Below, one piece after another: positions 14,257-64,000 of a DNA stretch of 64,000 nt. Positions within the stretch are counted from its first letter, which is position 1, and each line of letters opens with the position of its first letter. The stretch spans positions 4,402,001-4,466,000 of the forward strand of contig OZ365118.1 of the NCBI GenBank assembly GCA_977030845.1, written 5' to 3'. The DNA comes from Fimbriosthenelais zetlandica (lineage: Eukaryota). Below the pieces are notes generated by a model. The model worked only from the letters and a program-made list of their open reading frames with translations. It did no database searches and had not been told where the DNA came from. Both the position numbers and the translations under genes were made by a program.

Positions 14257-15160
14257 GTATCCATGGAAACCCATCGATTCCGGGATTAAGTCAAGTATCG
14301 ATCTCCACCAAAATTGATCCAAGGTATACCTATGCTATAGTATATTCCTGGTACCGTATGTAGTCTAGATATACCTGCCTGTATAACAAGCCTATACCGT
14401 ACATTGGTTAGAATGAATTGTGGAAATGATTTTAGGCTTAGACAAACTCCAGTCAATGAAAATTAATGGTGATTTTAACACCATGCGGGCAGTTAAAAAT
14501 AGCATGAGCAGCTCAGCCTGAGCTGCTCAGTGAGACGGAAGATCATTATTTATGCGTACAACAAAGTAACATTTATCTGTGTAATGTATCACTACCTGAT
14601 AAAGTCTCTTAAAGTAATATTAGATGTCCAGAACCAAACTTAATTCCATCCGCACCGAGTGGTGCCTATCGACTAGCAGCGTGCCCCGCCCACCCAGCAC
14701 TGGAGGCGGGACTCCAGGCTGAACGGGCACCGACTGGTCCTTACCGTCTGATTTCAAAGTCTCAAAACTCGAAAATTCGCAGGATAAAAATAACGAAACT
14801 TACATATATCACAGCCAGAGACGAGCCAGTTACGACGGTTGTCGATTTCAAAGTCTAACCTCAGTTATAATCCCGAAATCCGTACCTTTTCTACTTGTCG
14901 GAGCACCTGCTTTCTCACCTTCTCGGTTTGTTTTGTTAAGTTGCTAGATGACGTAGCCAGATGTGTGTACTACGTCACCATTTTAGTGGCGCTCCCTGCA
15001 CCGGAAGCCAGACTGCGCGCGCGTACCGGAAGCGTCAAGTGACAACAAATTTCAAACAAGTCTGAACCTATGCCAGCGATTTAGTCGCCAAAACCTCTGC
15101 AACTTCGGCTTTTCAGTTAAATTTAGAGAGATCTGGATGTGCACAAGGTCGCTAGGTAAC
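14257..15160. promoter_or_regulatory. Bidirectional ARMC3/PIBF1 promoter region with RFX X-boxes and ETS sites
   Basis: X-box matches GTATCCATGGAAAC (14257-14270), GTCGCTAGGTAAC (15148-15160) and a weaker GTTGCTAGATGAC (14940-14952). CCGGAAG at 15001-15007 and 15026-15032. CpG-rich island between two divergent genes. Confidence 0.65.
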
Positions 15161-32493: not shown

Positions 32494-35400
32494 ATGGGAC
32501 AACAAAGTTTAGGCGTGTTAACAGCCCTGATTGTCATCTTCACCTTCCCTTCCCCACAACTAGCTCAGTTTGGTAAGTCTTTCAATCTGTTTCTATTTGC
32601 TTCTAATATTAAAAATGAAAATGAGAACCTCTGGAAATGAATAAAAACCCATACTAATTAGGACAACAAATCTGCGTTCCATTAAGAAAAGCAATCTCCT
32701 TTTTAATTGAGAAATAATAGATGTATGGCTGTACTAATGAATCTTCAATCTTTCAGATTGTCCTAATCCGTGGGACAGCTTTGAAGGCAAATGTTACAAA
32801 TATAAAATACTCCCAACTAGTTATCAGGACGCTGTCCAAGATTGTGCGGTGAGTGAAAAAGACCCAACTAGATTTTAAATGAATGAATGGTGATTTAAAA
32901 CCAGCTGCTATATATATTCATGGCCAGATTTCACATACTGACTTTAAGAATCATCAGATAATTGTGTTTCTCTGAAATAATGCTCATTTGTGTTAATTTT
33001 GTTCATTTTTCAGCGGGATGGAGCGTCTCTGATCAGTCTCAATAGTAAAGCCGAACACGACCACTTTTCCGAGTATCTCATGAATAACGATAAGGGAAAG
33101 TAAGTCGCACATTTATTGTATCGCAAATTTATAAAGTACTTAGGCACACACAATACAATCACATTCGACTATATAGCCTTATTCTAGCACTTGGCTAACA
33201 TATGGCATAGACATGTCCACAAGTCTAGACTTTTCTCCCATAAAACTAGGAAAATCATTTCAATAGAAACTCAGTGACAACCTCTGACATGTTTGTTGTT
33301 CTTTTCGTCTAACAGCCAGGAATGGTTCACCAGTGGAAAGAGGCGTGAGTCGTCTGATATAGATCCACGGTTCTTCTGGGAAGGTGACGGTACAGAGATC
33401 CAAGGCAGTCAGTTCTGGCTCTCAACTCGCGAGAGATTCAGCAAGCGTGGTGAAATCATTGTCTACCATACAGACAGTAAGTATAAACTAACTCAGGGAC
33501 TTAACTCAGTCTGTTAGAGCACAAGCTCATAACAATGACTGAATGGTTGGCGCCTCAAGCCCCGAGAGGTCATTTTCACTACCTCCTTAAATCCTTAGGG
33601 CTTTCTGTGGATATATTCCAGAACTAATACACATTTTTCGTTTATTAGCTGGCAGAACGTATGGGTGGGTGCTAAGGGACCAGGATGTAAGAAGACCTTA
33701 CGTTTGTGAAATCAGCAAAGAAGAGATTTACAAAATCATCGATACATCACGAGGATATGGTACGTTCAACTCAATATCTCCCAATCACAATCTCTCTGAT
33801 TTTCTGTCTGTCCTCCCCTTCCATATGTCATTCTCAATTTGATCTTCTTGATATCTCTTCCTATCCTTACCTTGGTGCCATGCTCTTTGGTTTTAACACA
33901 GATTATGGCGTCAGTGAGATGGACCCACACAAGTTGCCCCGTGGACCCAAGTTCTCATATGAACCGAGGGACTTTGTCTATGATGCGGCTAGTGTGGACG
34001 ACTTTGTGGCATTAGAGTGTATCGCTGAAGGTATGCCACAACCCACCTACCGCTGGTTCAAACAGAGGGAACAGCAACAAGTGGTAAGTACAAACAAGCC
34101 TGTCTCATTTTCTGGTATTCAATTCAGAGACACTTTCCTGGGAATATTCCATCAAAGGTTTCAACCTTGAGCTCTATATGCATACAGGAATGTCTGAAAT
34201 GACACAAGCATGACTGCTTTTTTTTAGTTAGAATTTTTATAGAGCCTGTTATGGGTGAATACCAGCTCTTGATTACTCAAGTTTCTCGTATAATCCATGA
34301 AAGCTTTTTGAGGAACTCCCAAAGGTCAAAAAATCAATCTCAATCCTGCAAGGTATCTGGTATAGGAACATAACCTACCCAGCTATGGAATATTTGATTT
34401 TAGGGTCGGGCCAAGTTCACCAATATTGCCAGCATAAATACTTGCAGTAAAAGCAAGTCTTTATGTCTGATTTTCTGGAATTTTTCATCATGATATTTGA
34501 CATCTGTCAATACTGTAATTGCTCACAGTTGGTGACCACAGCCCGGGATGAGCGATATACGATCACTAATGGTAAACTAGTGATCAATGAGCCATCAGAC
34601 ACGGAGGATAACGGTGACTATCAGTGCGTGGCTGAGAACAGATACGGCTCCATCCTCAGTAACCAAGTCCAACTCAGCTTCGGTTATCTCCTCGACTTCC
34701 CCAAATCCAAGAGAGACGATGTCACCGTGGCTGCCTATGCCGGGGTTGGAATTGAATGTAATCCTCCAAAGCATTACCCTGGTAGGCTCAACTAATCTTT
34801 TCAATCCTTTCAATACACAACATAATATTGTATATATAGCTGAAAAACTTCCTTAAAATGGGGAGCTATGTAATGGTAATAATGTCTATAAATTATAAAT
34901 AAATTTTAACAATTCATCCTGGTGTCAAGTGCTCTGACTTTGCTGGTTCCAAGTCGTCCTGGACATTCATTTTTGTTATTTTTTAGTTAGAATTTTTATA
35001 GAGCCTGTTATGGGTGAATACCAGCTCACACTCTTGATTACTCAAGATTTCGTATGATTTTCAGCTGGGGCTCTTTCTAATAATGTGGTGACAATTTTTC
35101 TTTTCAGAGATTCTATACTCATGGTACAAGGACTCTATATTGAACTTTGTACGGCCACGTTTAAAGCCGTACATTTTCATATCACATAACGGTAAACTCT
35201 ACTTCTCTTCCGTGACCAAGGACGATGAAGGAGAATACTACTGTTTAGTGTTCAGTCCCAGAGCTGGGGTCTCCTCAGCTGAGGGCAAAGTCAGCATGCC
35301 CATCGTACTTACAGTGAGGGAAGCCAGTAAGTACAACTTAACTTTGTGATCATACACTTCATATAAAGCTTTTTCTGGTAAAGTTAGAGAAACTAGGCTT

Positions 35401-38400
35401 GGTCCAGTTTAAAATGGCTGGACCCAGTTTAAAATCGTTACTCAAATTTATATGAGACCTTTGATTTTCGGCCTCCATTGACTTTTGTCAGCTCAGGTTT
35501 CCTTGTTAGTAAGGTAACTTCCGTTTTAGTCTCTAGTTTCCATCTAGTGTTTATCTGGTTGCATTCATTTGAATATCTTTTCTTTATTCTAGTTGCCAGT
35601 GTGAGGGAGCCACAGATAGCTAGTGGATTCCCTACAGTCTTCCCCAGCAGTCCCAAACAGGGAGATGATGTACGAATGGAGTGCTTCGCTTGGGGAACGT
35701 AAGTCCTTTCACTTATTTCCTTCTATATCCTTCTAATCCCCAATAAATTAATTCTTGGGTCATATCAGGATGAAATGTTATTTGTCAAATCAATTATCTT
35801 TCCAGGAATGAGATTGGTAACTTGATGTATGAGTGGAGGAGGGTAGACAAACCTATGCCAGAAAATCATGTCTACGAAGATTACAAACGTGTTCTTAAAA
35901 TCCCCAACGTTAAAATCATCGATGCCGGTACTTACAGGTGTACTGTCACCAGAGTAAATGGTCAGTCCAGCTCCGGTAGTGTCCAACTACCAGTCGATGG
36001 TAAGTGTTTGTGGAGGGGAGGTATATTCGTTGATAAAAATCCCTGCTGATTCTAGGGTTTACCAATGAACAGATTGGCATTGACTCAATATCCAAGCCTC
36101 CAAATAACTTAATAATAGAGATTATATAGCAGTTAGTCCATGTCACTAGGGTATGCTACCTCAGATGTGCTTGCATCAGTAATACAATGAATGAATGAAT
36201 GAATGAATGAATGAATGAATGAATGAATGAATGAATGGTGATTTAAAGCCATGCCAGCTACCATGGCGATATTCATGGCAAATGCATCAGTAACCGTATG
36301 TAAAAGTAAGTATAAGTATGTCTCAAAATTCTAACTGAACCCATAATAAATATATCACATATAAATCTTTCCAGCTGCGCCTTTCTTCACCATCCCACTT
36401 CGCCATGCTCATGTGGACTTGAACGGCGAGCTACGGTGGTTGTGTATTGCTAATGGTAAGCCAGCTCCCACCTACAGATGGTACCGTAACACAACACTGA
36501 TAGAGCCTGACCAACTACCAGCTGAGGACCAGCAGAGAATCATCATACAGAACAATGTCCTCATGATCAGCAACATACAGGAGAGAGATGCTGCCATGTA
36601 TCAGTGTGCTGCTAGTAATCTACATGGTGTCAGATATAGCTCTGCTCAACTCAGGGTGCTCTGTAAGTATACAGTTAACTGTATCAAAGCTCATTGCATA
36701 AAAACATGGCTCATTGCATAACAAAGTAAAGATTTGTTCAAAGAGATCTTAAAGATTTCATTGAGCTTGAGATGATTTCAAAGGGTGTCCACGACCCCTA
36801 AAAATCATGTTGTCCCCAAAGCTTAATCAAAAGGTATGAAAACCTCAATATGGAGGACTCTAGATTGCATACCTATAGATCCAGTTGAAACCAAAAAATG
36901 GGTTTGTAAAAGCCATCGATATCTATTTAGAAGAGGGTCTTTACTGAAAGTTTAGTTCAAGTCTGAGCCACTCAGAAGTTCACTGAAACATTGCTTCTCA
37001 CTTTTTGCAGCGTTTGCGCCCACGTTTGATAAGTACCCCATGCAGCCCACGACTTACGCCACAAAACGTGGAAACGTGACAATCCTGTGTGAACCGGAAG
37101 CTGCTCCACGGGTAGAGAAGGAATGGAAGAAGGACGGGAGGCTGCTGAACCCAGGCCGGGATGAAACCTCACGAGTTCAACTACTCCCCAACGGTAACCT
37201 CCGTATACAAGGGGTTTCTACAAACGATGTGGGCAAATATACATGTGTGGCTACCAATGATAATGGCCGGGCAGAGAGCTCCAGTGAACTCGAAATTCTG
37301 TGTAAGTGTCTTATCTTTCATATTTGTTGCTTTAAAATGTTACTCAGTTCCGTGATGTTGATGGTTTGATTTGTTTTGTGTCCTGAAGCTGATGTCTTCT
37401 GGATGTTTTCCAAAGTGCAGATGTTGGATTCTTGTATAGATGTGTTTTGAATAGTTTCCTAATTTTCTGAAGCTGATATCTTGACTAGTTTCCTGAAGCT
37501 GATGTCTTGGCTAGTTTCCTGAAGCTGATATTGTGGCTAGTTTCCTGAAGCTGATATCTTGGCTAGTTTCCTGAAGCTGATATCTTGACTAGTTTCCTGA
37601 GGCTGATGTCTTGGCTAGTTTCCTGAAGCTGATGTCTTGGCTAGTTTCCTGAAGCTGATATCTTGACTAGTTTCCTGAAGCTGATGTCTTGGCTAGTTTC
37701 CTGAAGCTGATATCTTGGCTAGTTTCCTGAAGCTGATATCTTGGCTAGTTTCCTGAAGCTGATGTCTTGGCTAGTTTCCTGAAGCTGATGTCTTGGCTAG
37801 TTTCCTGAAGCTGATATCTTGGCTAGTTTCCTGAAGCTGATATCTTGGCTAGTTTCCTGAAGCTGATATCTTGACTAGTTTCCTGAGGCTGATGTCTTAG
37901 CTAGTTTCCTGAAGCTGATGTCTTGGCTAGTTTCCTGAAGCTGTTGTCTTTATTAGCATTCTGAAGTTGATCTCTTGTTTTTTCAGCCTCGACCACCATC
38001 AGCCATTTCCCACGTAACACCGTTGTCCAGTTGAATCACACGGCCTTCCTGCCCTGTCAGGCATCCTACAACCCTCTCCTCGACCTCACCTACCTCTGGT
38101 TCCACAATGGCCGCCAGATCGACTTCATCCGCATCCGCTCCATCAGCAACGAAGTCTACATAGAAAACAACAGGTACTACTCCCGTGGTACTGGTATCAA
38201 CAGAGGCGGTCTCTACATAGAAAGCGCCAAGTTTGAGATGGCTGGGGAGTATACCTGTGTGGCAAGAACAGCCTCTGATCGGATCAGTCGATCAGCAACC
38301 CTCAGGGTGATTGGACCACCTGGAATGCCTGCTGGTATATTCGGTGGCAGCGTTGAAGCCACTAGTATGGTCATAGCATGGGTGGATGGAGAAGACAATG

Positions 38401-40945
38401 GTCGACCGATCACATCATATATAGTTGAAGGATACAGTAATCATGAGAAAGTATGGAGAGAGATGAAAGGAAACATCAAGGGAGCCGACATGGAAGCTCA
38501 GAGGACACTGATAAAGGGGCTGTCACCCTGGACGGAGTATAAGTTCCGTATCAGAGCTGAGAATTCACTAGGTATTGGTGAACCAAGCAGAGAGTCTGAA
38601 CTCTATACTACAGATGAGATGACACCACAGGTGGTACCAGAGAATGTGGGCGGCGGTGGGGGGAAAGTGGGCGATCTGGTCATTACCTGGGATCCTGTAC
38701 CTCCAATTGATCAGAATGGAAGGGATGTCTACTACATGGTCTATTGGAAGAAGAGATTCGTCATCGATGAGGAATGGTCATCGGTAGGTGGAACTATCTC
38801 CTGAGATTTGTTTTCTCTGCTTTTGTTTTATGCTTTCAAGATATCCTTGGTCATGTAGTTTTAAAATGGCAATGACCTTGGTCATGTAGTTATAAAATGG
38901 CAATGACCTTGGTCATGTAGTTATAAAATGGCAATGACCTTGGTCATGTAGTTTTGAAATGACTCATAACCTTGGCCATGTAGGTATAAAATGGCAATGG
39001 GCTTGAGGATGTACTTGTAGTTATAAAATGTTTCTATTTGCCTCAGGTAAGAGTGGACGGAGCAGAGAGCCACAGGAAGGTGGTCTTGGTGGGTCAGAAT
39101 AACTACTTTAGCCCTTACGATGTGAAGGTGCGGGTAGGCAATAGGAAAGGCCTGGGTATAGACACCACAAAGGAGAACCCATTCACATCTATCATGTCTG
39201 CTGAAGACAGTAAGTATATCATTTATCTTTGGGATATCCTTTTCCATTTTCCTTCCGTGTATATTTTCCTTTTCCATTGTCCTTCTTTTGATTTACAATA
39301 ATGCATTCCTAGGTTTGTTAATGCCATGTTAGGTCTATGGGAAGAAACGGGCTCCATTTGAGCTTAACATTAAATACAAATATAGATGTTGAATATAATG
39401 TTTTATAATTATTTCCTTTCAGTTCCTATCGGTGTGGCTACTAATGTCAGGTCATACTCGTATAACGCTACGGCGCTAATTGTAAGGTGGAATCCAGTTC
39501 CAGACACAAGAGAAACTATCAAGGGCAACCTGCTAGGCTACAGGGTAAGACTACTTGGTCCTAGCTTACTTATCCTTAAACTTCAGTGGGATTCTCGCAG
39601 ATCTCACTGCCATCTTTTAGTCATTGTTGTAAGCAATATTCCTGATAGCATTAATGTGTTTTTTTTTTACAGATTAACTATTGGAAGGAGGATGGCGAGG
39701 ATGAGACCATGTCTATATATAATGTCATAGCTGGGCAGGCAGAGAATGGACTGGTCATAGGACTGGAGCATCATAAATACTACTATGTCAACGTGCAAGT
39801 GTTTAACAGTGCTGGAAATGGTCCTAAATCACAGGATTACCTCGAGGAAACTCTCAGATCTGGTGAGCTTTTCTCTGTGTTGATTTCTCAATGAATTCAG
39901 GATTTCATTCAATGGATTCAAATCACTGAACTGAATTTATGAATGGATGTGTATTGTCTTTCAGCACCTAAGAACCAGCCTACTGAAGTACGAGTGAAGG
40001 TTGTGGATCATGATTCTATAGAGGTTGATTGGAGGGGTGTGAGTACTGGGATAGAAGAGGAACCACTCCAGGGTTACATGGTAAGTGTCATTGCTAGCTC
40101 TGCTCATTAGAGCTGAATGGATTCGTACAAAATGCTTTAAATTGTACTTGCACCATCTTTATGGAATTCAATTTAGAATTCAACGAATTCGAACTACTTA
40201 CCCTTGTCTCATGACAGTCTAATAATGACGGAAAACTTAAAGCTTTCCTGGCCCAAACAATTCAAATTACATTTTCAAGATCTTTTAAAAAAATCCTTAA
40301 TTTCCTCTCATGAATGTCTAATCATGACGGAAAACTGAAAGCTTTCCTGACCCCAAAAATTCATATTACATTTTCAAGATCTTTTAATAAATGCGTCAGT
40401 AGGTCTAAATTATCCCTTTCTGTGACAGGTGAGGATTTGGAGGTTGGGAGAATCCATCTACCACCCTACAGATTACGACTCATCTAAGAAGACGCATTAC
40501 GTCATAGACAACCTGGAGCAGTATGTCTACTATAACCTCCGTGTGTACGGGTATAGCCGTGGAGGGGAGGGTCTCATGAGCTCTCCAACCATACAGTTCG
40601 TGCTCGGCGAGTCCTGCCAAATTTTAGAAAGTAAGTATCTTCTATAACTCATCTGCCAGGGTGGATTCAGGGGAAAAGGAGCTATTCTTAGGGCTAACTA
40701 AGATCACTCCTACCTCTTGGATCTGCCCCATTTGCGTAATTCTTTATATTATGGAATTTTAAAGTATGTTTTTTAATAAAAATACATTAAGATTATGGTA
40801 TGAATGAGATGAAAATAAATATGTTTTTTTCTTCACAGCTTCGCCAGACCGGCGTTTTGTCTATGCCTGTGATGGTTGTATGATTAAGAGCTCTATCATG
40901 CTCCTCCTAGCTTCCTTTATACTTCATCTACTCACCAAATTATAG
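32494..40945 (+). CDS. Cont: Invertebrate-type contactin: signal peptide, C-type lectin-like domain, 6 Ig domains, 4 FN3 domains, GPI-anchor signal; about 1252 aa
   Basis: 19 exons: 32494-32572, 32757-32848, 33014-33099, 33316-33476, 33649-33759, 33902-34083, 34529-34781, 35108-35326, 35593-35698, 35806-35999, 36375-36662, 37011-37301, 37987-38783, 39047-39209, 39423-39544, 39673-39862, 39965-40080, 40429-40630, 40839-40945. Ig motifs (DNGDYQC, DEGEYYC, DAGTYRC, DAAMYQC, DVGKYTC, MAGEYTC) and FN3 motifs (LSPWTEYKFRIRAEN, YNLRVYGYSRGGEG). Hydrophobic C-terminal IMLLLASFILHLL with no cytoplasmic tail. Confidence 0.92.
36186..36236. repeat. (AATG)n microsatellite in a contactin intron
   Basis: About 12 copies of aatg. 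Confidence 0.9.
37469..37950. repeat. Minisatellite, about 18 copies of a 26-bp unit, in a contactin intron
   Basis: Unit gaagctgat(a/g)tcttg(g/a)ctagtttcct, head-to-tail with no spacers. Confidence 0.95.
38845..39030. repeat. Minisatellite, about 6 copies of a 31-bp unit, in a contactin intron
   Basis: Unit aatgaccttggtcatgtagttataaaatggc with variants. Confidence 0.85.
40208..40391. repeat. Diverged intronic direct duplication (period about 101 bp)
   Basis: tcatga..gtctaat.atgacggaaaact.aaagctttcctg...ttacattttcaagatcttttaa occurs twice. Confidence 0.8.
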
Positions 40946-42077: not shown

Positions 42078-42626
42078 GTTGCCATAGAGATAGATATAGC
42101 GGAAGTCTTTCTTTTCCGTTTACTGGTTTAATTTTAAAATCTGCCTTGTATGGCTGCTTGTAAATATGAATACAATGCTAATATGTTACAGAGGGCTACC
42201 TTAAAACCGCCATTATAGCAGGGATAGCCTCCGTCCTTAAGGCTAAATGCAGTACAAATAATAGAAGCATTTTGGTTCAGATCGAAGACATATTTTTGTA
42301 CAAATTGAATTTCATCTTTTAATCTGTTACGTATTGGGATGGATCAAAATGCGAGTTATTCTGCACGATTTTAACTTGAAATGCCATGTTTTAACATTCC
42401 ATTAAATTTATCTGCCAGAAAAACTCGGAAATAAAATATATAAAAGACATATTTTACTGTTTGTTCTCAGTAGCCATCCCACGCACTTAAATGTTAATTG
42501 ATTAGGTAAGTCCACAATTAACTACAAATTTCTTCGGCCACTGCTGGGGGTCTTTTCGGGTTTGTTAAGAAGGCAGTCTTCTGAGACAGAGTCCGTATCC
42601 TTGGTTACCATGGCAAGTATATAAAA
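42078..42626 (+). promoter_or_regulatory. Putative promoter of the 7TM gene: two X-boxes and a TATA box
   Basis: GTTGCCATAGAGAT at 42078-42091 (reverse complement ATCTCTATGGCAAC). GTTACCATGGCAAG at 42604-42617, directly followed by TATATAAAA at 42618-42626. No ATG between the TATA box and 42784. Confidence 0.55.
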
Positions 42627-42783
42627 CCTTCCCTAGTACCTGGAGAGTAGCAGGCACTTGCTTCATTTGACTTGGTATTTTCAAACATCAAACTCAGAAA
42701 TTAGCATCGATCATCATTTGCCTGGTACTTTGATCGTTTATATCAGACAGAATCTTTTGGCATCTTACACATTACATTACAAG

Positions 42784-44425
42784 ATGGACAATTGCACCTT
42801 CAGTGCCAATCTCACCAACAGTTCTTCCTCTGACTGTGGAACTCGGATTCTAACACCAACTCAAGTTAACAAGTATTTTCATTATGACGAACTCTATCTC
42901 ATGGTATTGGTGCTGATGTGCCTGGTGCTTACTCTGGTGCTCACTCTGGTGCACCTAATGAAGGTGCTACTAGGCTGCACCAGCAGTTTAAGGCAGGTCA
43001 ACTATCAAACAAACTGCATCAGAAGGTGCGCTGGGAGTTTCATCCCTCCAGTTCTTGCCTTCCTCTGTCAGCTGAGTATCTTACTCATTGTAAGGTGTCG
43101 GCTTAGCAGCATGGACTCATCAACGATAGCAAAAACCGCCCAAGGTACAGTTCTCACTCATCTATTCCTTCAGTTTCCACATTTTAAAGCATTTCTGTGT
43201 CATTGGGGATAGGGGGTAACCTAAAGTAACATATCAACGCCTCCTACTACTCTTTCAAAAACCAAACTTTTCGAACCACATATCTGACCATTTAAACTCA
43301 TTTACTTTGAAAATTGAAATTTGATCTTCGTTGAGCTTGGGTGTTCCAGAGAATTTCTGTAACTTCCAAATTTCCCTTGACAGGTAACTATATGGGTATA
43401 TTCCTTTAATTTCAGGAGGCCTGCTTCATTTTGCAATGTTCAGCCTATTGGCAATCAACGTTCTACCTTGTGCCTACCAGTCTAATCTGGACAACCCGGT
43501 ACTGGGTGGTGAGGCGAGTATGGTCAGCCATCTTGTTTACCTACTCCTTGCCTTTATCATGTCAGTCATACTGACCACTTTCCACCACATCCAGGGTGTC
43601 CAGTCCCTGGAGGAACACTGCTGGTCATCTAATTCCCCTCCTATTGGGATCATACCTCTTGTTGTTCTCATTATATTGCTACTTGTAGTTGTGATGCAGA
43701 GCTTTAAGGTTATCTTTGGTGATGTTAGTGTGGCTGATGTCAACGCCCCCAGTAAAGGCCCTATCAGGGTCAAGGTATGTGCCAACATGCTGGTTGCCTT
43801 GATATTTGGCCTGCCTTTCGCGCTCACCTATCTTTCCCTCCTGATCTACCCCCAAAATACAACCTTAGAAACGATCAGTGGGAGTCTCTTATGCATCTAC
43901 AGCCTTCTCTTGGCGGCTCTGCCTGAAATTTCATGGCTGGTGCATTTGATGACATTTGAGAAGAAGAGTGAAATTGCTGCAGGTGCTATACCAAGTGCAC
44001 CTGAGGCTGCCCCAGGTGCAGGTGCCGCACCAGACAGGGCTTCAACAACCAATATCCAGTTTGACCATGAGGTGCGTTTAGTTGCCGAGTATTCCCCTGG
44101 TAAAAGAATTGTGGATGACCCCTCCATTGTAGCTAGCTGGAGAGCTTCAAGATCAACGACCAGCCCAACATGGACCATTCAAAGCAAGGTGACGGACATA
44201 CCACCCCTAGAAGATCACTCAATGAGAAGGCAGAGCAGGAACTCAACACAAACAAAGAAGATGTCACAGATGAGTGTGGCATCAGATAGTTCCCTACTGA
44301 TTCTCCAGTCACTCCGACGACTGACTAATATCAGGAAGCCCTCCTTTCTTCCACCCAGGGCTGCTAACCCAACTCCCTTCAGAGCTGAGGCCAGCCTAAC
44401 TAGCAACAAAGGTATGGGACTTTAA
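42784..44425 (+). CDS. Divergent seven-transmembrane protein, class B (secretin/adhesion)-like 7TM fold with a very short N-terminus; 456 aa
   Basis: Exons 42784-43144 and 43416-44425 join in phase 1 (AAG|gtacag ... tttcag|GA). Seven hydrophobic segments, an N-glycosylated N-terminus (NCT, NLT, NSS), a TM3-like GLLHFAMF, an ECL2 HCW, a TM5 IIPLVVL and a long S/T/R-rich C-tail. Confidence 0.7.
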
Positions 44426-45400
44426 GCTTTATAATTAAGACAGATCTAAATCATATAATTAAAGCAAGTATCCATTTTCTGAATATTTTTCTCTTGTCAA
44501 AAATACTTATTGCAAATAATTGCAAAAGGGTACAAGGGTACAGTTTCCTGCTGGGCTGCAGGAGTTTGTAATATGGATATCCCCAACTTCTGACATTATT
44601 AATGACGAAAAGAAACTGAAACATTATCTTCTTTTCAGATGTTACAACTAACAATCCAGGGGAAGGTAATATCAAAACTTGCTGGGTACTCCCTTATGAA
44701 GTTACTTCAGTTGTCTAAACAACCCACGGGACAATTCTCATCGAAAAGACTATGAATATTAAAACTGTTAAAAACCCATAACCATCATAGGTATTTATTT
44801 ATTGGTACCGTTCAGCAGAATTCAATAGAGACGTATAAAGAGGCATTGAAGCCAATGTAGAGACGTATATATAGAAACGTCTTTGTTATGAAGATTTGAC
44901 CAACTTATCTGCCAGAAGTCAGGAATTAACTGAACTAGAGTTAGTAACATGGACAAACTGAAATAAATGTATGTTTTGGGTAGCAGTTATATGGTGAATA
45001 ATAAAGCCTTCCCTCAGAACTGTTTACTATAACTGAATGTGTAAATCATGTTTGGCAAACCGAAGTATATAATACGTTGTATAATGAAATATTCTTGAGC
45101 AATAGATAATGAAATATATATATTGAATGGAATATATAATAGAATAAATATATTGTTGTATCTGTAATATACAATGGAAGAATATAATACCATCTCAATC
45201 GATGATCAATATATAATAATCATAAATAGAAGATAAATATAGGCAGCCATCAATAGAGGTATTGTGATAATAAGTCTGTGAGATTAATGTTATAAAGTCT
45301 AAGCTTCTGCTACAATCATGAATAAATTGGAACTGGCACAGATACACCTCAAAGGTGGTACTGTTGAGTGTGCACCCTCAACTTTGTTGATTTCAAATAG

Positions 45401-47179
45401 TTATATTTTTGAATGTACAGGTGATGAGTCTTCATGAAGGAATTTAAAGGTCATGTTACGAATGGTAGTATTACCGCCATATTTGAGCAGCTCAGAGTCA
45501 GAAGGGCAAGCCACTGAGAGCTTGCTGTGCGGTGTCATGTCAGATCTTGAAAAATTACTCAAACTCGTCGCTGAGGGCAATCGTGAGCCCTTCTTTGGCT
45601 GAAGACGTACGAAATAATAATCCTTGATTTGCCTCTCTCGGTCGTGTTTGTATGAATCGAGGCCGTCACAGAAGTGTTGTATTTTCATCTTAAACTCAGC
45701 AGACTTGACGCGCTCTCGTTGGAGGGTGAAGGATCGGAGTGACTGAGGTCGGGAAGTCTGGCGAGAGAGAAGATCGAGAGATTGTTGCGGAGTAGACAGG
45801 AGTGAAGAAGATGGGGGAGGAGCGGTTTGAAGTTCCTCCATACCCTGTGCAGTTTCAGCAGGGAAGGTGGGAGGGAGGGGAGGGTTATCCTTCACTATAC
45901 TAGTCACATCTTCTGACGCTTCCTTCTGATCATCAAGGACCGGATGGAACAAGCTTTTTGTATGCAGTTCATGAGCTGTTTTGGGCCTTAGCGTCAGGGA
46001 AGCTGTGCTACTTCCAATCACAGTCTTGGTCTTCCCAGTATCAGAAACTACTTCACTGTCTCTTTGTCCAACTGACAAATTGACTTCATCAATCTTGGCG
46101 AGTTTGGGAACTATCGGAGTTTCGTGTCGAGGTTTCTTAGGTTGACCTTTGAGGATTTTGAGGGCTGCGATTTCTGACTCTTGCTGATGGAGGACTCTGT
46201 TGGTTTGAGGTACAGCTGGGGAGATCAAGACGCCAGAGTTGTTCACTTTCTCTCTCTTGTTGAGAGCTCTGGGCAGGGCTGACATGGGTTTAGCCCTGCT
46301 GGAGATGACCTTGATTTTCTGACGTGGTTTGTGTCGAGTGGGTGATCTAGGCTCGGTTCCATCAGTCTGGTCTGCCACCATCTGTATACCATCAGAATGA
46401 TGGTTAAATTGTCCATCATTTCCAACAATCATCCGTGCACTGTTTCCTAATGGTGTCTTCCTTACATTATTAGTTAAAGATGTAATTTCAATCTCACTTT
46501 GTGGTGACCTAAAGCTTTGCTTGCTCGCTCCTTCGGATCTACCATCTTGTGGTCTTACGTCATTGGCAGTTTGTCTTGCTTTCACTTTGACTCGAATACT
46601 CCCAGCAGAATGGCCCCTGCCATCATGTACCTTGCTACTTGGTGTACTGGAGAGAGGTCTCAGTCTCAGACCTGCAGAATTCACACCACTGCTGGTCGCT
46701 ACTGGTTTGATCTTTACTTTAGCCACAGGGGGCGCAGCAAAGGAACTTGTTAATGAGGGCAGTTGTTTCGGTTTGGCTTCTGGCGTTCCCACTAACAATT
46801 CCTTATAGGGTTTCCTTATAGGGGCACTCCTGAAGGCTAAACTTCCTTCTTTCCATATTTTAGCTAGCTGAGCATCGGCTGCCCTGACTTCAGCCGCCCC
46901 GGGTGGGGGGTTGGTGGGAGATGTGGAGGTGGCCCTCAATTGTCTTTCGGTCGCCCTGTCACCCACGATTCTGGCGTGGGAGATGTTGGACTGAGCAACT
47001 TTACGGTGGAAGCGGCGACAGAGAATCTTCTGATGGCTTGATATTGTACTTATTACCGCCTTCTCTCCTCGCTCGAGATTCCGAAGGTTGCGGTCCAATA
47101 TAAGGTTTTCTTTAGAATTGGCAAAGAAAACCCTGGAAAACTTTTCAGCTGCAGCAATGTCTTCCTTCTTCTGAGCCAT
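45401..47179 (-). CDS. Uncharacterised 592-aa protein with a single coding exon; predicted helical N-terminus and a largely disordered basic S/P/K/R-rich middle
   Basis: 1779-bp stop-free ORF in AT-rich DNA, ATG in good context (ATC ATG G), and a plausible upstream acceptor. By eye, the N-terminal FANSKENLILDRNLRNLE...HQKILCRRF loosely resembles the CCDC190-type N-terminal motif (unverified). Confidence 0.75.
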   Translation of the reverse strand: MAQKKEDIAAAEKFSRVFFANSKENLILDRNLRNLERGEKAVISTISSHQKILCRRFHRKVAQSNISHARIVGDRATERQLRATSTSPTNPPPGAAEVRAADAQLAKIWKEGSLAFRSAPIRKPYKELLVGTPEAKPKQLPSLTSSFAAPPVAKVKIKPVATSSGVNSAGLRLRPLSSTPSSKVHDGRGHSAGSIRVKVKARQTANDVRPQDGRSEGASKQSFRSPQSEIEITSLTNNVRKTPLGNSARMIVGNDGQFNHHSDGIQMVADQTDGTEPRSPTRHKPRQKIKVISSRAKPMSALPRALNKREKVNNSGVLISPAVPQTNRVLHQQESEIAALKILKGQPKKPRHETPIVPKLAKIDEVNLSVGQRDSEVVSDTGKTKTVIGSSTASLTLRPKTAHELHTKSLFHPVLDDQKEASEDVTSIVKDNPPLPPTFPAETAQGMEELQTAPPPSSSLLSTPQQSLDLLSRQTSRPQSLRSFTLQRERVKSAEFKMKIQHFCDGLDSYKHDRERQIKDYYFVRLQPKKGSRLPSATSLSNFSRSDMTPHSKLSVACPSDSELLKYGGNTTIRNMTFKFLHEDSSPVHSKI

Positions 47180-53051: not shown

Positions 53052-54128
53052 TCACCCAGAGCTGAAACCTGTGGAGGTGGTGCTGACAGAATCTCTCATA
53101 TGGACAAATAACTGCCTCAGTTCCTTTCGGAACTTGGAACCCCCGATACAGTAAAGAAAGAAGTTGACGGCATTGTTGGTATAATAAAGTTTAAGGGTGA
53201 TATGATAAACAAGAATGTATGTGGCTAAAACCGCAGGATCGGATCTGTAGTCTACAATAGTGTAAACTATGTACCTTACATACACAGGCATGGCTAGTAT
53301 CAAAAACACGAAATTAACCAACAATAACATCACAGTCAACTGAGACTGCTCCTTATCTTCTGAATCTTTTGATTTTTTGTTATCAGAAGGACCTTTAACG
53401 CGGGAGAATTCAGTGGCATCTTTGAATGATTTGGTGGCATTTCGTGTGGTCTTCAATAAGATAATGTTCATCACAAGTAGGGATACAAAGGGAATGAAGG
53501 CATTCAGAATAATACACAAAATAGCATAGACTCGGACCCATGCGCTCTTTCCATTGAATGTAAGACAAGTATAGTTTAGGCCAGAATCAAGCAAAACCAA
53601 GTGAGGTATGTTGAAAATGATGACGAAGACAACAAGGATGCCGATCATGATCTTCGTCCGTTTCGGTGTACAATGTGCGCGGCGGAAGGAACTGAGTGAG
53701 AAACGGACTGCGATGAAACGATCCACTGTCATAGCCACAATGATTAACATCCCAAACTGGGCTGAAGCCAGGAGAATGTAGCCAAGTATGGAACATTCCA
53801 GATTATGGAATATTGGGACCTCAAAGGTGGGCTTGATCCAGTAGTATCCCATAATGAGGAGGCAAATGTTATCCGCTACAGCTAAGGCAGCCATGTAGAG
53901 ACAGCAGGAGAGGCGACGGTTGTGCTTCTTCAGCATGATGATCAGAGCTAGACTATTACATAGGATACCCACCAATACGATAATAGGTGTCCAGTAGATA
54001 TGTAGACCAACACCTATCTTATAGATGGTGTATTCTGAAGCTAGTTGAGCCACGGACTTGTTAGCATTCGTCCAATCAAACTGCTCAGGCGCGCCTTCTG
54101 CCATTGGAAGTTCAGTTGTATACTCCAT
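53052..54128 (-). CDS. Intronless class A (rhodopsin-like) GPCR, FMRFamide/peptide-receptor-like orphan, copy A, 358 aa
   Basis: Seven TM segments, TM1 GILCNSLA, TM2 YMAALAVADN, TM3 MTVDRFIAV and TM7 NNAVNFFLYC..GSKFR. The first ATG is at 54128; the ORF-track start at 54149 is a non-ATG codon. Confidence 0.92.
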   Translation of the reverse strand: MEYTTELPMAEGAPEQFDWTNANKSVAQLASEYTIYKIGVGLHIYWTPIIVLVGILCNSLALIIMLKKHNRRLSCCLYMAALAVADNICLLIMGYYWIKPTFEVPIFHNLECSILGYILLASAQFGMLIIVAMTVDRFIAVRFSLSSFRRAHCTPKRTKIMIGILVVFVIIFNIPHLVLLDSGLNYTCLTFNGKSAWVRVYAILCIILNAFIPFVSLLVMNIILLKTTRNATKSFKDATEFSRVKGPSDNKKSKDSEDKEQSQLTVMLLLVNFVFLILAMPVYVRYIVYTIVDYRSDPAVLATYILVYHITLKLYYTNNAVNFFLYCIGGSKFRKELRQLFVHMRDSVSTTSTGFSSG

Positions 54129-55435
54129 TTTTCTAATTAGAAATATCAATTTCCCTTGTCCTTGTCCGCAGTATTTCCACAGTCCTTCTCTTCTAAATAA
54201 TTCAAGTGTTGGAGATCCTGGGTTTAGAAGTTTCTTGCTGGTAACTATTTTCCTTGGAAATAGATTCGGTATTGATTTCTCACAAGGTAAGAAAGTGGCA
54301 ATATAATATCAGACATGTGTAGTACAAGATATTAATTGAGATATGGGTACCAAGTGACAACAAATATCCCTGGACAAATACTCCAGAATGGACAAAGAGC
54401 AGAATTATTACAGTCCCCTTGTCAGCTGTGGGATTATTTCCTCATTTATTCCACCAATCCTCTAGGCTTCCTGTTACAATCGATGCCTTGGAAGCAGAAC
54501 AAATTGATCACGATACAGATTAAATCTGAAAAATCTTCATGGCTGAAGCTTTTTCTAAACTTCTAATGGGGTCCAAAGTCAACTGAAAGGATTAGAATCG
54601 CACAAAGTGTTTCACGTTTCACTCTAACCAATAAGTGTGTAAGATGTACATGCATAATGTTGCATCTCGACTGAGCCAACTGTGGAGTAACTGAGAAGGA
54701 GGGGGTGGGGGGCTGATGGTATTGGGATGAGCGTTCGTCTACTAATGGGCGTGTACGTCACCAAAAGATATCATATTTGGAAACTATATATTGGACCAAA
54801 ATATTAGACTACACACACACCAAACAACCCTCTAAATTGACCACTCTCTAAACCATGTTTGGCTGATCTATTTTCCTTCTAATGTTTAAAATGCCCGCTT
54901 AAATGTAGCAACCATCACCCCATAAAGACCACTTCCGGCCAATTATGAAGATGATCAAATATCGGAGGAGCACTGTATTATGCAACACCTGCATGCATTG
55001 ACTTAATGTAACAAGTGTATTAAATATATATACATGTAAGAGTAAAGACAGAAGCAGTAGTTTTTAAATATTAATTCTTTATTTTAAATAACAATCCCTG
55101 AGAAGGCAAGTGAGCGAACCTTTACATTTGAAACCATTGTTTGTGAAGACATCATACACCGATAGGCTATATATACACATCAGTACAAGTATTAATAACA
55201 TTACCACAAGGTTTTTTGGCACCGGGGAGGATAATACATATCACTAAATAAATATGATATATAAATACAAAATTTAAATGATTGTAAAATATACACCAGT
55301 TATTAATAGGAAATTACAATTTAAATTATATCAATGAATTAAGTGATTCCAACTTTAAATGTTACGTAAACAACGGATGGTGGTGATGAGAAAAAGATGT
55401 GAAGATGAAAAAGAAAATAAATTAGAAAAAATATC

Positions 55436-56536
55436 TCAGACAGAGCTGGAATTTGTGGAGTTCGTTGGAGAGCTCACGGAATCTCTGATATGAACAAATA
55501 ACTGTTTCAGTTCCTTTCGGAACTTGGAACCCCCGATACAGTACAGGAAGAAATTGACGGCATTGTTTGTATAATAAAGCTTATGAGTGATATGATAAAC
55601 AAGGATATAAGTGGCTAAAACCGCAGGATCGGATCTGTAGTCTACAATAGTGTAAACTATGTACCTTACATACACAGGCATGGCTAGTATCAAAAACACA
55701 AAATTAACCAACAATAACATCACAGTCAACTGAGACTGCTCCTTATCTTCCGAATCTTTTGATTTGTTCTTATCACAAGGGCCTTTAATCCTGCAGAATT
55801 CAGTGGTATTTTTGAATGTTTTAGTGGCACTTCGTATGGTCTTCAATATGATAATGTTCATGGTAAGCAGGGACACAAAGGGTATGAAGGCATTGAGGAT
55901 AATACTCAACATAGCATAGACTCTGACCCAAGCGCTGTTTCCACTGAATGTAAGACAAGTATAGTTGAGGCCGGAATCAAGCAAAACCAAGTGAGGTATG
56001 TTGAAAATGATGACAAACAGAAGAAGTACACCGATCATAATTCTGGTCCGTTTTGGTGTGCAATGAGCTCGACGGAAGGAACTGAGGGAGAAGCGAACTG
56101 TGAGGAATCGATCCACTGTCATAGCCACAATGATTAACATCCCAAACTGGGCTGAAGCGAGAAGTATGTAGCCAAGTATGGAACATTCTAGATTATGGAA
56201 TATGGGGATCTGAAAGGTGGGTTTGATCCAGTAGTATCCCATTAGGAGGAGGCAAATGTTATCCGCTACAGCTAAGGCAGCCATGTAGAGACAGCAGGAG
56301 AGGCGACGGTTGTGCTTCTTCAGCATGATGATCAGAGCTAGACTATTACCTATAATGCCTACCAGCACGATTACAGGTAGCCAGTAGATATGCAGACCAA
56401 CACCTATCTTATAGATGGTGTATTCTGAAGCTAGCTGACCCACGGACTTGTTACCCGCCACGCTTCCAGTCTCATTCGACCAATCAAACTGCTCAGGCTC
56501 GCCTTCTGCCATTGGAAGTTCAGTTGTATACTCCAT
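55436..56536 (-). CDS. Intronless class A GPCR, FMRFamide/peptide-receptor-like orphan, copy B (tandem paralogue of copy A), 366 aa
   Basis: Same motifs as copy A with high similarity. Flanking non-coding DNA is also duplicated (about 52570-54600 versus about 55050-57110). Confidence 0.92.
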   Translation of the reverse strand: MEYTTELPMAEGEPEQFDWSNETGSVAGNKSVGQLASEYTIYKIGVGLHIYWLPVIVLVGIIGNSLALIIMLKKHNRRLSCCLYMAALAVADNICLLLMGYYWIKPTFQIPIFHNLECSILGYILLASAQFGMLIIVAMTVDRFLTVRFSLSSFRRAHCTPKRTRIMIGVLLLFVIIFNIPHLVLLDSGLNYTCLTFSGNSAWVRVYAMLSIILNAFIPFVSLLTMNIIILKTIRSATKTFKNTTEFCRIKGPCDKNKSKDSEDKEQSQLTVMLLLVNFVFLILAMPVYVRYIVYTIVDYRSDPAVLATYILVYHITHKLYYTNNAVNFFLYCIGGSKFRKELKQLFVHIRDSVSSPTNSTNSSSV

Positions 56537-63505: not shown

Positions 63506-64000
63506 TTATTTCTCAGGATCACTGAGCAAATCACTTTTGCAACTGTTTTTGCGGGTTGAAAACAACTTCCGAAGATCCTCTCTAAACTTGGAACCTCCAA
63601 GACAGTAGAGGAAGAAATTGACGGCGTGGTTGGTGTAGTAAAGTTTGTGTGTTAAATGGTAAAGGAATATGTAGAGAGCATGATCAAAGGCGGACGCATT
63701 GAAGTCAACATAAGTGTAGACGATATAACGTACATAGACTGGTGTAGTCAGGAGGAGAAAGACTATGTTAACCAGTAGAAGAGTGACTGTCAGTTGGGTC
63801 TGGTAGTCACCAGATTTCTGCTTCACCTCCAACTGTCCTCGACTAATGTTCATCTGATATTTATTAATGAGCTTCCATTCCCTCTCCTTCAGTGTTAAAA
63901 TGATCATCATGTTTATGGTGAAGAGACAAATGAATGGTAAAACTGCATTAACTACAATGCTAATCATAGCAAAAACCTTCACGAAATTCCCATCTCCTCT
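63506..64000 (-). CDS. Third class A GPCR of the same family (TM5-TM7 and C-terminus; 5' part lies beyond the window)
   Basis: The frame is open to the window edge (RGDGNFVKVFAM...). QLTVTLLLVNIVFLLLTTPVYVRYIVY and HKLYYTNHAVNFFLYCLGGSKFR parallel copies A and B. Confidence 0.9.
   Translation of the reverse strand, partial: RGDGNFVKVFAMISIVVNAVLPFICLFTINMMIILTLKEREWKLINKYQMNISRGQLEVKQKSGDYQTQLTVTLLLVNIVFLLLTTPVYVRYIVYTYVDFNASAFDHALYIFLYHLTHKLYYTNHAVNFFLYCLGGSKFREDLRKLFSTRKNSCKSDLLSDPEK

What the first reader, a model, noticed from the sequence alone, without database searches (positions are those of the whole stretch)
42078..44425. Headless class-B-like 7TM receptor behind two RFX X-boxes and a TATA box: candidate new ciliary receptor
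Seen: the two ORF-track fragments splice into one 456-aa protein with seven hydrophobic helices. By eye its pattern follows secretin/adhesion GPCRs (TM3 GLLHF similar to LLHY, TM4 VYLLLAF, ECL2 HCW similar to CW, TM5 IIP, TM6 LIFGLPF). It has only about 36 extracellular N-terminal residues (no hormone-binding, GAIN or GPS domain), lacks the usual Cys at the top of TM3, and has a C-tail of about 150 aa rich in S/T. The promoter reads X-box (42078), X-box (42604), TATATAAAA, an ATG-free leader, then AAG-ATG-G. Established: X-boxes mark genes of ciliated cells, and some short-N-terminus non-class-A receptors (e.g. GPR157) are ciliary. Inference: a lineage-specific, RFX-driven ciliary or sensory 7TM family outside the standard GPCR classes. 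This is my best candidate for an undescribed system here.
Basis: partly seen in the sequence, partly recalled or inferred. Interest (0 to 1): 0.75.

Follow-up and report, generated by a model that had tools for sequence, protein, structure and literature searches.

The report
Orphan seven-helix membrane receptor gene
This is a real, single-copy animal gene for a seven-helix membrane protein with a short outer end and a long, conserved inner tail. It has only one detectable relative in public data, its likeness to class B receptors is faint, and the proposed link to cilia rests on one near-perfect RFX binding site.

Summary
Exons 42784-43144 and 43416-44425 join through a GT..AG intron of 271 nt into a 456-aa protein. 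It has seven hydrophobic segments, a 37-residue N-terminus carrying sequons, and a 157-residue tail.

The gene is real. Its one homologue (P0001, 37-39% identity) has an acceptor at the same place and phase. Synonymous sites are saturated and dN/dS is about 0.18.

It is not a family in this genome: there is no paralogue in 447 Mb. Only one relative was found among 1.84 billion representatives.

'Class-B-like' is only faintly supported:
- Pfam, a PDB sequence profile and an own-genome 7tm_2 HMM give nothing.
- A profile-profile comparison aligns TM4-ECL2-TM5-TM6 colinearly with this genome's adhesion-type receptors. The score is 27.8, HHalign probability 10%, and 0 of 60 shuffles reach it.
- Language-model neighbours are 7tm_2/Dicty_CAR/Frizzled clusters, below threshold.
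- The structure model was too poor to judge.

Only the X-box at 42604 is good (one mismatch). The one at 42078 is chance level. Perfect X-boxes number 2,354 in this genome, so one site is a weak pointer to cilia. No RNA run was listed, so promoter, ends and expression are untested.

The scan's index returned only this same stretch, not other DNA.

Verdict: an orphan 7TM receptor-like gene of moderate to low interest.

The parts
42078..42091 (.). Weak X-box-like string (GTTGCCATAGAGAT; one good half-site only)
   Evidence: Matches only the degenerate consensus GTHNYYATRRNAAC, with 1 mismatch. That class is at chance level in the window: 22 found against 14.7 +/- 4.9 expected.
42604..42617 (.). 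Near-consensus RFX X-box, GTTACCATGGCAAG (last base G instead of C)
   Evidence: One mismatch to GTTNCCATGGNAAC; 3 such sites in the window against 0.18 expected. Genome-wide, the ...AAG variant occurs 57 times against 7 for the reversed control, and the perfect palindrome at 2,354 sites against 3. The surrounding 391 nt are unique in the genome.
42618..42627 (+). TATA-like element (TATATAAAA) directly after the X-box, about 160 nt before the ATG
   Evidence: Read. TATAWAWR occurs 95 times in the window, so this is weak evidence alone. X-box followed by TATA within 15 nt occurs 59 times in the genome against 0 for the control, mostly in repeat families.
42634..42636 (+). First in-frame stop (TAG) upstream of the start codon
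   Evidence: It limits any N-terminal extension within this exon. No ATG lies between the TATA element and 42784.
42784..43144 (+). Coding exon 1: N-terminus with three sequons, TM1, a long first inner loop, TM2 and the first outer loop (residues 1-120 plus 1 nt)
   Evidence: Single copy in the genome. No Pfam match.
43145..43415 (+). Intron, 271 nt, GT..AG, phase 1
   Evidence: Donor CCCAAG|GTACAG and acceptor TTTAATTTCAG|GA. The orthologous contig L002 has an acceptor (CCCCAG|AC) at the aligned position and the same phase.
43416..44425 (+). Coding exon 2: TM3-TM7 and the 157-aa cytoplasmic tail, ending in TAA
   Evidence: Homologue P0001 at E 6.8e-27, 37% identity. Conserved blocks are FGLPF..YL.LL..P (TM6), LAALP (TM7), HE.RLVAEYSP.K and SLLI.QSLRRLT...PS.LP.RA.NPTP.RA. 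dN/dS is about 0.18.
44458..44463 (+). ATTAAA, a likely polyadenylation signal 33 nt after the stop
   Evidence: In the orthologous contig an AATAAA also begins 33 nt after the stop (L002:1275).

Best explanation
A real, single-copy, taxonomically restricted gene of at least two coding exons. It encodes a 456-aa seven-helix membrane protein with its N-terminus outside and C-terminus inside.

The most likely mechanism is inferred, not shown. The protein is a cell-surface receptor of the GPCR type, possibly a very divergent ectodomain-less offshoot of the adhesion/class B branch. It would sense a ligand with its short glycosylated N-terminus and with the fast-evolving TM3-TM5/ECL2 face. It would pass the signal through the conserved proline-bearing TM6 (FGLPF) and TM7 (LAALP). 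Output would go through a long cytoplasmic tail whose distal motifs are the best-conserved part of the protein. These motifs presumably dock a conserved partner or are phosphorylated (RRLT is a basophilic-kinase type site).

Transcription probably starts shortly after a TATA-like element. That element is preceded by one near-consensus RFX X-box, so RFX input is plausible. Expression in ciliated cells is only one of several possibilities.
For: Gene model:
- Consensus splice sites and frame.
- The orthologue has the same intron position and phase.

Purifying selection:
- 73 of 115 identical residues use different codons, dS is saturated and dN/dS is about 0.18.

Topology:
- Seven hydrophobic segments.
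- Sequons only on the predicted outer side, apart from one in the tail.
- My count from the sequence: K/R 4+0+4 plus the tail on the inner side, against 2+3+0+0 on the outer side.

GPCR likeness:
- ESM-feature neighbours are all 7tm_2/Dicty_CAR/Frizzled-type clusters, at 0.88-0.89.
- HHalign to 16 own-genome 7tm_2 domains scores 27.8 over 99 colinear columns, TM4 to TM6. Shuffles give mean 15.3, sd 2.4, maximum 23.1.
- Class A and Frizzled profiles give null scores.
- Foldseek's top rows for the weak model are nearly all GPCRs, though not significant.

Tail conservation:
- Distal tail 32/55 identical, against 22/95 in TM3-TM5.

Promoter:
- X-box with one mismatch, TATA-like element, ATG-free leader and in-frame upstream stop.
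- The locus is not repeat DNA.
Against: - No family-level match: Pfam, PDB sequence profile, Dicty_CAR and 7tm_2 genome scans.
- An HMM of this genome's 7tm_2 domains scores the protein at -14.2 bits, below its shuffles.
- Each sequence alone gives a null HHalign score.
- The AlphaFold model of TM3-TM7 has pLDDT 52, so the fold was not established.
- The first inner loop is about 25 residues, which is long for a GPCR (own knowledge).
- Class B hallmarks as I recall them are absent: a TM3 Cys, GWGxP in TM4 and QG in TM7.
- There is no RNA evidence for the splice, the start, the end or the expression.
- The C-to-G X-box variant is about 40 times rarer than the perfect site in this genome.
Confidence: 0.6

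Rival explanations
1. One reading: an RFX-driven receptor of ciliated or sensory cells that localises to cilia, comparable to GPR157.
For: - A near-consensus X-box lies directly before a TATA-like element, about 180 nt upstream of the ATG.
- The X-box motif is under very strong selection in this genome: 2,354 perfect sites against 3 for the control.
- GPR157, a short-N-terminus non-class-A receptor, is ciliary (PMC4855140).
Against: - Only one site is better than chance, and it carries a mismatch at a strongly selected position.
- The number of X-boxes probably far exceeds any ciliome (inference), and many sit in repeats.
- A single X-box not shown to be conserved is not predictive (PMC2375033).
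- RFX factors also drive spermatid and other programmes (PMC4498915, PMC4745085, abstracts only).
- I saw no ciliary targeting motif that I know of (AxxxQ in the third inner loop, C-terminal VxPx) that is also conserved in the orthologue. This was checked by eye only.
- There are no expression data.
Confidence: 0.15
2. A seven-helix membrane protein that is not a G-protein-coupled receptor, for example a transporter-like, scaffold or trafficking protein. On this reading the important part is the conserved cytoplasmic tail, and the GPCR likeness is only the generic look of a helical bundle.
For: - No GPCR family is detected by any HMM.
- The only Pfam hint is a sub-threshold WLS-like_TM match, E 0.026 and 14.3 bits against a cut-off of 28.3.
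- The tail is better conserved than the helices.
- The first inner loop is long.
- Structure prediction gave low confidence.
Against: - The profile-profile signal is specific to 7tm_2, is colinear and beats all shuffles.
- All language-model neighbours belong to one GPCR clan.
- The Foldseek rows are dominated by GPCRs.
- The N-out/C-in topology with N-terminal sequons and a long tail is the usual GPCR layout.
Confidence: 0.2
3. The gene model is incomplete. Either the protein has further coding exons upstream, giving an ectodomain (perhaps even the Ig/FN3 exons at 33.7-40.6 kb on the same strand), or it has further exons downstream that replace the last four residues.
For: - AG dinucleotides with moderate pyrimidine tracts exist between the upstream stop and the ATG, for example at 42745 and 42749.
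- The end of exon 2 looks like a donor (AAAG|GTATGG at 44411/44412). The orthologue has AGTG|GTGAGC at the aligned codon and phase.
- A 27-nt exon-like piece lies at 44639-44665, between TTTTCAG and GTAATA.
- A contactin-like gene lies upstream on the same strand.
Against: - A Kozak-like ATG follows an ATG-free leader, with a TATA-like element, an X-box and an in-frame stop upstream.
- An N-terminus carrying sequons and no signal peptide is typical of receptors with short N-termini.
- Both species have a polyadenylation hexamer beginning 33 nt after the stop.
- About 2 kb without coding ORFs separates the last FN3 exon from the ATG.
Confidence: 0.15

Closest known systems
ADGRA1 (GPR123), the one adhesion GPCR without adhesion domains or a GAIN domain
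   Same: The architecture is the same: a short extracellular N-terminus, seven helices and a long cytoplasmic tail thought to carry the function (PMC13178472). The only above-noise profile signal of the window protein is to adhesion-type 7tm_2 domains.
   Different: ADGRA1 is a clear 7tm_2 member, 37-44% identical to ADGRA2/3 in the 7TM region. The window protein fails every HMM test for 7tm_2. No PDZ-type C-terminus is established here.
GPR157 and cAMP-receptor-like (Dicty_CAR) receptors
   Same: A short N-terminus, not class A, and GPR157 is ciliary (PMC4855140). Dicty_CAR-bearing clusters are among the nearest language-model neighbours.
   Different: There is no Dicty_CAR match in Pfam at E<=10. 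The Dicty_CAR genome scan did not hit this locus. Ciliary localisation here is untested.
The intronless adhesion-type 7tm_2 receptors of the same genome (L012-L027)
   Same: Colinear likeness over TM4, ECL2 (HCW against iCW), TM5 and TM6 (LIFGLPF against WIFGF), with HHalign score 27.8 and P 0.003.
   Different: Those genes have open frames of roughly 450-1,030 aa, mostly 750 or more, around a 250-aa 7tm_2 match, so most leave room for a large N-terminal part. They score 60-120 bits on PF00002. The window gene has a 37-residue N-terminus, one intron and no HMM match. TM1-3 and TM7 do not align.
Lineage-specific orphan 7TM genes of invertebrates in general
   Same: Narrow taxonomic range, fast-evolving helices and no assignable family (own knowledge).
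   Different: Such genes usually occur as expanded, often tandem families. This one is a singleton, and its tail is conserved.

Membership tests
Secretin/adhesion GPCRs (Pfam 7tm_2, PF00002) | Match to the family HMM above its cut-off | tested here: not met
   There was no 7tm_2 row at E<=10 for either exon product. The locus is absent from the PF00002 genome scan at E<=0.001. An HMM of 16 own-genome 7tm_2 domains scores the protein at -14.2 bits, against a shuffle mean of -9.3.
Secretin/adhesion GPCRs (Pfam 7tm_2, PF00002) | Profile-profile similarity across the 7TM core | tested here: inconclusive
   HHalign gives score 27.8, probability 10% and P 0.003 over TM4-TM6 only. None of 60 within-segment shuffles reach it (maximum 23.1). 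The known pair 7tm_2-Frizzled scores 32.1 in the same set-up. Each single sequence alone gives a null score.
Secretin/adhesion GPCRs (Pfam 7tm_2, PF00002) | Conserved TM3-ECL2 disulfide (Cys at the top of TM3 plus the Cys-Trp of ECL2). This definition is from my own knowledge. | tested here: not met
   C189-W190 is present, but there is no Cys at the top of TM3. In the orthologue the Cys column is kept and the Trp is not.
Secretin/adhesion GPCRs (Pfam 7tm_2, PF00002) | Extracellular hormone-binding or GAIN/GPS domain before TM1 | tested here: not met
   Only 37 residues precede TM1. An in-frame stop lies at 42634 and the leader has no ATG. Upstream coding exons are not excluded without RNA. 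ADGRA1 shows that this feature is not universal.
cAMP-receptor-like / GPR157 (Pfam Dicty_CAR, PF05462) | Match to the family HMM | tested here: not met
   There is no row at E<=10. The genome scan gives three sub-threshold hits elsewhere and none at this locus.
Frizzled/Smoothened (PF01534) | Match to the family HMM or profile | tested here: not met
   There is no Pfam row. HHalign to four own-genome Frizzled domains scores 15.2, a null value. The HMM gives -4.2 bits.
Rhodopsin-type GPCRs (PF00001) | Match to the family HMM or profile | tested here: not met
   There is no Pfam row. HHalign to 21 class A domains scores 14.7, a null value. The HMM gives -3.3 bits.
GPCR-type seven-helix fold (any class) | Seven membrane helices, N-terminus out and C-terminus in | tested here: met
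   Seven hydropathy peaks. Sequons lie at 3, 9, 12 and 268 on the predicted outer side. Basic residues favour the predicted inner loops.
GPCR-type seven-helix fold (any class) | Three-dimensional superposition on solved GPCRs | tested here: inconclusive
   Only TM3-TM7 could be folded, with a two-row alignment, giving pLDDT 52. Foldseek's best rows are GPCRs, but at E 0.09-2 and TM 0.3-0.5. The full-length protein could not be handed to the fold tool by reference.
RFX (X-box) regulon | X-box matching the consensus close to the start of the gene | tested here: met
   GTTACCATGGCAAG lies at 42604, with one mismatch, 180 nt before the ATG. It fails the restricted consensus GYTRYY N1-3 RRHRAC of PMC2375033 by its last base.
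RFX (X-box) regulon | X-box conserved in orthologous promoters | not testable with these tools
   The only orthologous contig (L002, 1,332 nt) holds exon 2 alone. The exon 1 search found nothing.
RFX (X-box) regulon | RFX-dependent expression in ciliated cells | not testable with these tools
   No sequencing run was listed for this stretch.

The most novel reading that the evidence does not exclude
A previously undescribed, taxonomically restricted receptor lineage. On this reading it derives from adhesion/class B GPCRs by loss of the whole ectodomain, as ADGRA1 did independently in vertebrates. It would be switched on by RFX through an X-box-TATA core promoter in ciliated or sperm cells, and would signal through a conserved tail motif set (HE.RLVAEYSP; SLLI.QSLRRLT; PS.LP.RA.NPTP.RA) that has no known binding partner.
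Probability: 0.1. Interest if true: 0.55.

Novelty: new variant of a known kind. Interest (0 to 1): 0.33.

Why it matters
If the faint class B likeness is real, this would be a second, independent case of an adhesion-type receptor stripped of its ectodomain. Its output would depend on a conserved cytoplasmic tail, which bears on how such receptors are activated without a tethered agonist.

The gene is also a clean example of a protein with essentially no relatives in 15 billion public sequences that is nevertheless under purifying selection.

The side result may matter more for reading this genome. Perfect RFX palindromes occur about 800 times more often than the reversed control, and many are carried by repeats. 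Single X-boxes should therefore not be read as ciliary marks here.

Tried and rejected
- **Word-indexed homologue searches.** Exon 2, exon 1 and the two-row profile gave nothing beyond P0001. P0001's cluster has one member and no name.
- **RNA evidence.** Two look-ups listed no run.
- **Rfam.** No match in the window.
- **Structure.** AlphaFold2 on TM3-TM7 with two rows gave pLDDT 52. Foldseek against PDB and AFDB clusters gave no significant hit. I do not count the GPCR-rich top rows as evidence.
- **Full-length fold.** The spliced 456-aa protein has no reference form and I did not type it, so it was never folded.
- **Complex prediction.** The exon 1 product against the exon 2 helices gave 'no answer' (score 0.14). 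This is neither for nor against.
- **What X-box-TATA modules drive elsewhere.** Five copies showed only repeat DNA, with no informative ORFs downstream.
- **Rejected: the 7TM exons are the 3' end of the upstream contactin-like gene.** It is unlikely (see the rival explanations) but is not excluded.
- **Rejected: the WLS-like_TM hint (E 0.026).** It is below the cut-off, and the protein lacks the large luminal domain of that group.
Full report
**What is in the sequence**

The window is animal DNA, 39% G+C and without N. An ATG at 42784 (ACAAG-ATG-G) opens a frame that runs to a donor CCCAAG|GTACAG after 43144. An acceptor TTTAATTTCAG|GA precedes 43416, and the frame continues to a TAA at 44423-44425. 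The intron is 271 nt, phase 1. The joined CDS is 1371 nt and encodes 456 aa.

Hydropathy gives seven peaks: 38-56, 85-103, 122-140, 156-174, 196-214, 246-264 and 278-296. NxS/T sequons lie at 3, 9, 12 and 268. All four are on the side predicted to be extracellular if the N-terminus is outside. Basic residues favour the predicted inner loops. The tail after TM7 is 157 aa, with 22% S+T against 18% overall. The observation on the protein is therefore confirmed.

**Is it a real gene?**

An exhaustive HMMER pass over 1.84 billion representatives found one relative. This is P0001, 316 aa, E 6.8e-27, 37% identical by BLASTP. It sits on a 1,332-nt genomic contig from run ERR14368249 (L002).

Upstream of P0001's called start, the frame stays open back to an acceptor CCCCAG|AC. 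This lies at the aligned position and has the same phase as the window's acceptor.

Of 115 identical residues, 73 use different codons. dS is saturated and NG86 dN/dS is about 0.18. The conservation is therefore at the protein level.

Conservation is uneven:
- TM3-TM5: 22/95 identical.
- ICL3-TM7: 31/75 identical.
- Proximal tail: 30/84 identical.
- Distal tail: 32/55 identical.

The conserved blocks are FGLPF..YL.LL..P (TM6), LAALP (TM7), HE.RLVAEYSP.K and SLLI.QSLRRLT...PS.LP.RA.NPTP.RA. Both species carry a polyadenylation hexamer that begins 33 nt after the stop. This favours the stop at 44425 as the true end.

**Is it a family?**

No. Neither exon product, nor the two-row profile, finds a second copy in the 447-Mb genome. 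The word-indexed searches add nothing, and P0001 is alone in its cluster. The gene is a singleton with a very narrow known range.

**Which kind of seven-helix protein?**

Sequence models give nothing:
- Pfam has no GPCR family at E<=10. It shows only sub-threshold WLS-like_TM and TMEM240 rows.
- A PDB sequence profile finds nothing at E<=10.
- The Dicty_CAR and 7tm_2 genome scans do not touch the locus.

Two weak leads point the same way.

First, the language-model neighbours are all 7tm_2/Dicty_CAR/Frizzled-type clusters. Their scores are 0.88-0.89, with 141-153 shared features. The tool itself rates this as a lead only.

Second, I built profiles from this genome's own receptors:
- 16 intronless adhesion-type 7tm_2 domains.
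- 21 class A domains.
- 4 Frizzled domains.

I compared these with the profile of the spliced protein plus its orthologue. Against 7tm_2, HHalign gives score 27.8, probability 10% and P 0.003 over 99 colinear columns. Residues 158-257 align to positions 111-224 of 245. This pairs TM4 with TM4, HCW with the family's iCW, TM5 with TM5, and LIFGLPF with WIFGF.

Sixty shuffles that keep each helix and loop in place gave mean 15.3, sd 2.4 and maximum 23.1. Class A (14.7) and Frizzled (15.2) are at null level. The known distant pair 7tm_2-Frizzled scores 32.1 in the same set-up.

Against this lead:
- Each sequence alone is null.
- A plain HMM of the same 7tm_2 domains scores the protein below its shuffles.
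- TM1-3 and TM7 do not align.
- The Trp of 'CW' is not kept in the orthologue.
- The class B hallmarks that I recall (TM3 Cys, GWGxP, QG) are missing.

Membership of class B is not shown.

**Fold**

The spliced protein has no reference form, and I did not type it. Only TM3-TM7 was folded, with two rows, and the model is poor (pLDDT 52). Foldseek rows are mostly GPCRs but not significant. A two-chain fold of the exon products gave 'no answer'. The fold question stays open.

**Promoter and the cilia idea**

The site at 42604, GTTACCATGGCAAG, has one mismatch to the palindromic X-box. Three such sites lie in the window where 0.18 are expected. The site at 42078 belongs to a class that is at chance level.

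The X-box is directly followed by TATATAAAA. There is no ATG before 42784, and an in-frame TAG lies at 42634. TATA-like octamers are frequent here, however (95 in 64 kb).

Genome-wide, GTTRCCATGGYAAC occurs at 2,354 sites against 3 for the reversed control. The ...AAG variant occurs 57 times against 7. The motif is clearly selected, but the terminal C matters and the variant here is the rarer, weaker kind.

X-box-then-TATA within 15 nt occurs 59 times against 0. Most of these are dispersed or tandem repeats, and five copies showed no informative gene downstream. The 391 nt around this gene's X-box are unique, so this site is not repeat-borne.

Laurencon et al. found that an X-box upstream of one gene's ATG is not predictive by itself. 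For X-boxes that fit the restricted consensus and are conserved between species, 16 of the 25 genes they tested proved to be RFX targets (PMC2375033). RFX factors also run spermiogenesis programmes (PMC4498915, PMC4745085, abstracts). RFX input is therefore plausible, at perhaps one in three. A ciliary role is a further, untested step. No RNA run was listed.

**Comparison with known systems**

The nearest architecture is ADGRA1/GPR123. It is the one adhesion GPCR without adhesion and GAIN domains, and it has a long cytoplasmic tail (PMC13178472). The window protein works like these at the level of layout only. It fails the sequence tests for both families.

**Verdict**

This is a real orphan seven-helix receptor-like gene:
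- Single copy, with one known orthologue.
- A conserved tail.
- A faint adhesion/class B likeness.
- One credible but imperfect X-box.

It is a new variant of a known kind, of moderate to low interest until expression and a full-length fold are available. The scan's own index held only this same stretch (s1-210724) and no copy on other DNA.

Noticed in passing
whole genome G000: The perfect RFX palindrome GTTRCCATGGYAAC occurs at 2,354 sites against 3 for the reversed control. Many copies are carried by repeats. One is a dispersed element reading GTTGCCATGGTAACCAAAATTTCCAGTTATAAAA. Another is a tandem array of 34-nt period at C29:1362918-1363319. A third is a multi-copy GTTGCCATGGTAACGGTATATATAAAA module.
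   Followed up: partly
window 14257-14270: An X-box, GTATCCATGGAAAC, lies 65 nt beyond the start of the 1,001-aa reverse-transcriptase/endonuclease ORF (11187-14192, minus strand). It is about 900 nt upstream of a coiled-coil ORF at 15169 (plus strand). It could belong to the retroelement's 5' end or to the neighbouring gene.
   Followed up: no
window 22315-22369: Two X-box-like palindromes 41 nt apart: GTCTCCATGGAGAC and GTTTCCATGGCAAG. No gene was assigned.
   Followed up: no
window 44411-44760: The last codons of exon 2 look like a splice donor (AAAG|GTATGG), and the orthologue has AGTG|GTGAGC at the same codon and phase. Downstream lies a 27-nt exon-like piece (44639-44665, between TTTTCAG and GTAATA). 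After it comes an acceptor-like site near 44709 that would add Val-Val-stop, followed by ATTAAA at 44758. This may be an alternative C-terminus. There is no RNA to test it.
   Followed up: partly
window 53052-54149, 55436-56536, 63506-63982 (minus strand): A tandem array of closely related intronless class A receptors. 7tm_1 matches at E 1.5e-22, with a weaker Srw-type match.
   Followed up: partly
window 33706-40647 (plus strand): A multi-exon Ig/FN3 (contactin- or DSCAM-like) gene ends about 2 kb upstream of the 7TM gene on the same strand.
   Followed up: partly
window 45401-47179 (minus strand): A 592-aa open frame, rich in S, P and K, has no Pfam match. It is convergent with the 7TM gene.
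   Followed up: partly
G000 loci L012-L027: At least 16 intronless adhesion-type 7tm_2 receptors with open frames of roughly 450-1,030 aa. Several are in tandem pairs: C25:34885652/34888708, C21:8516240/8520322 and C21:20295987/20300041.
   Followed up: partly
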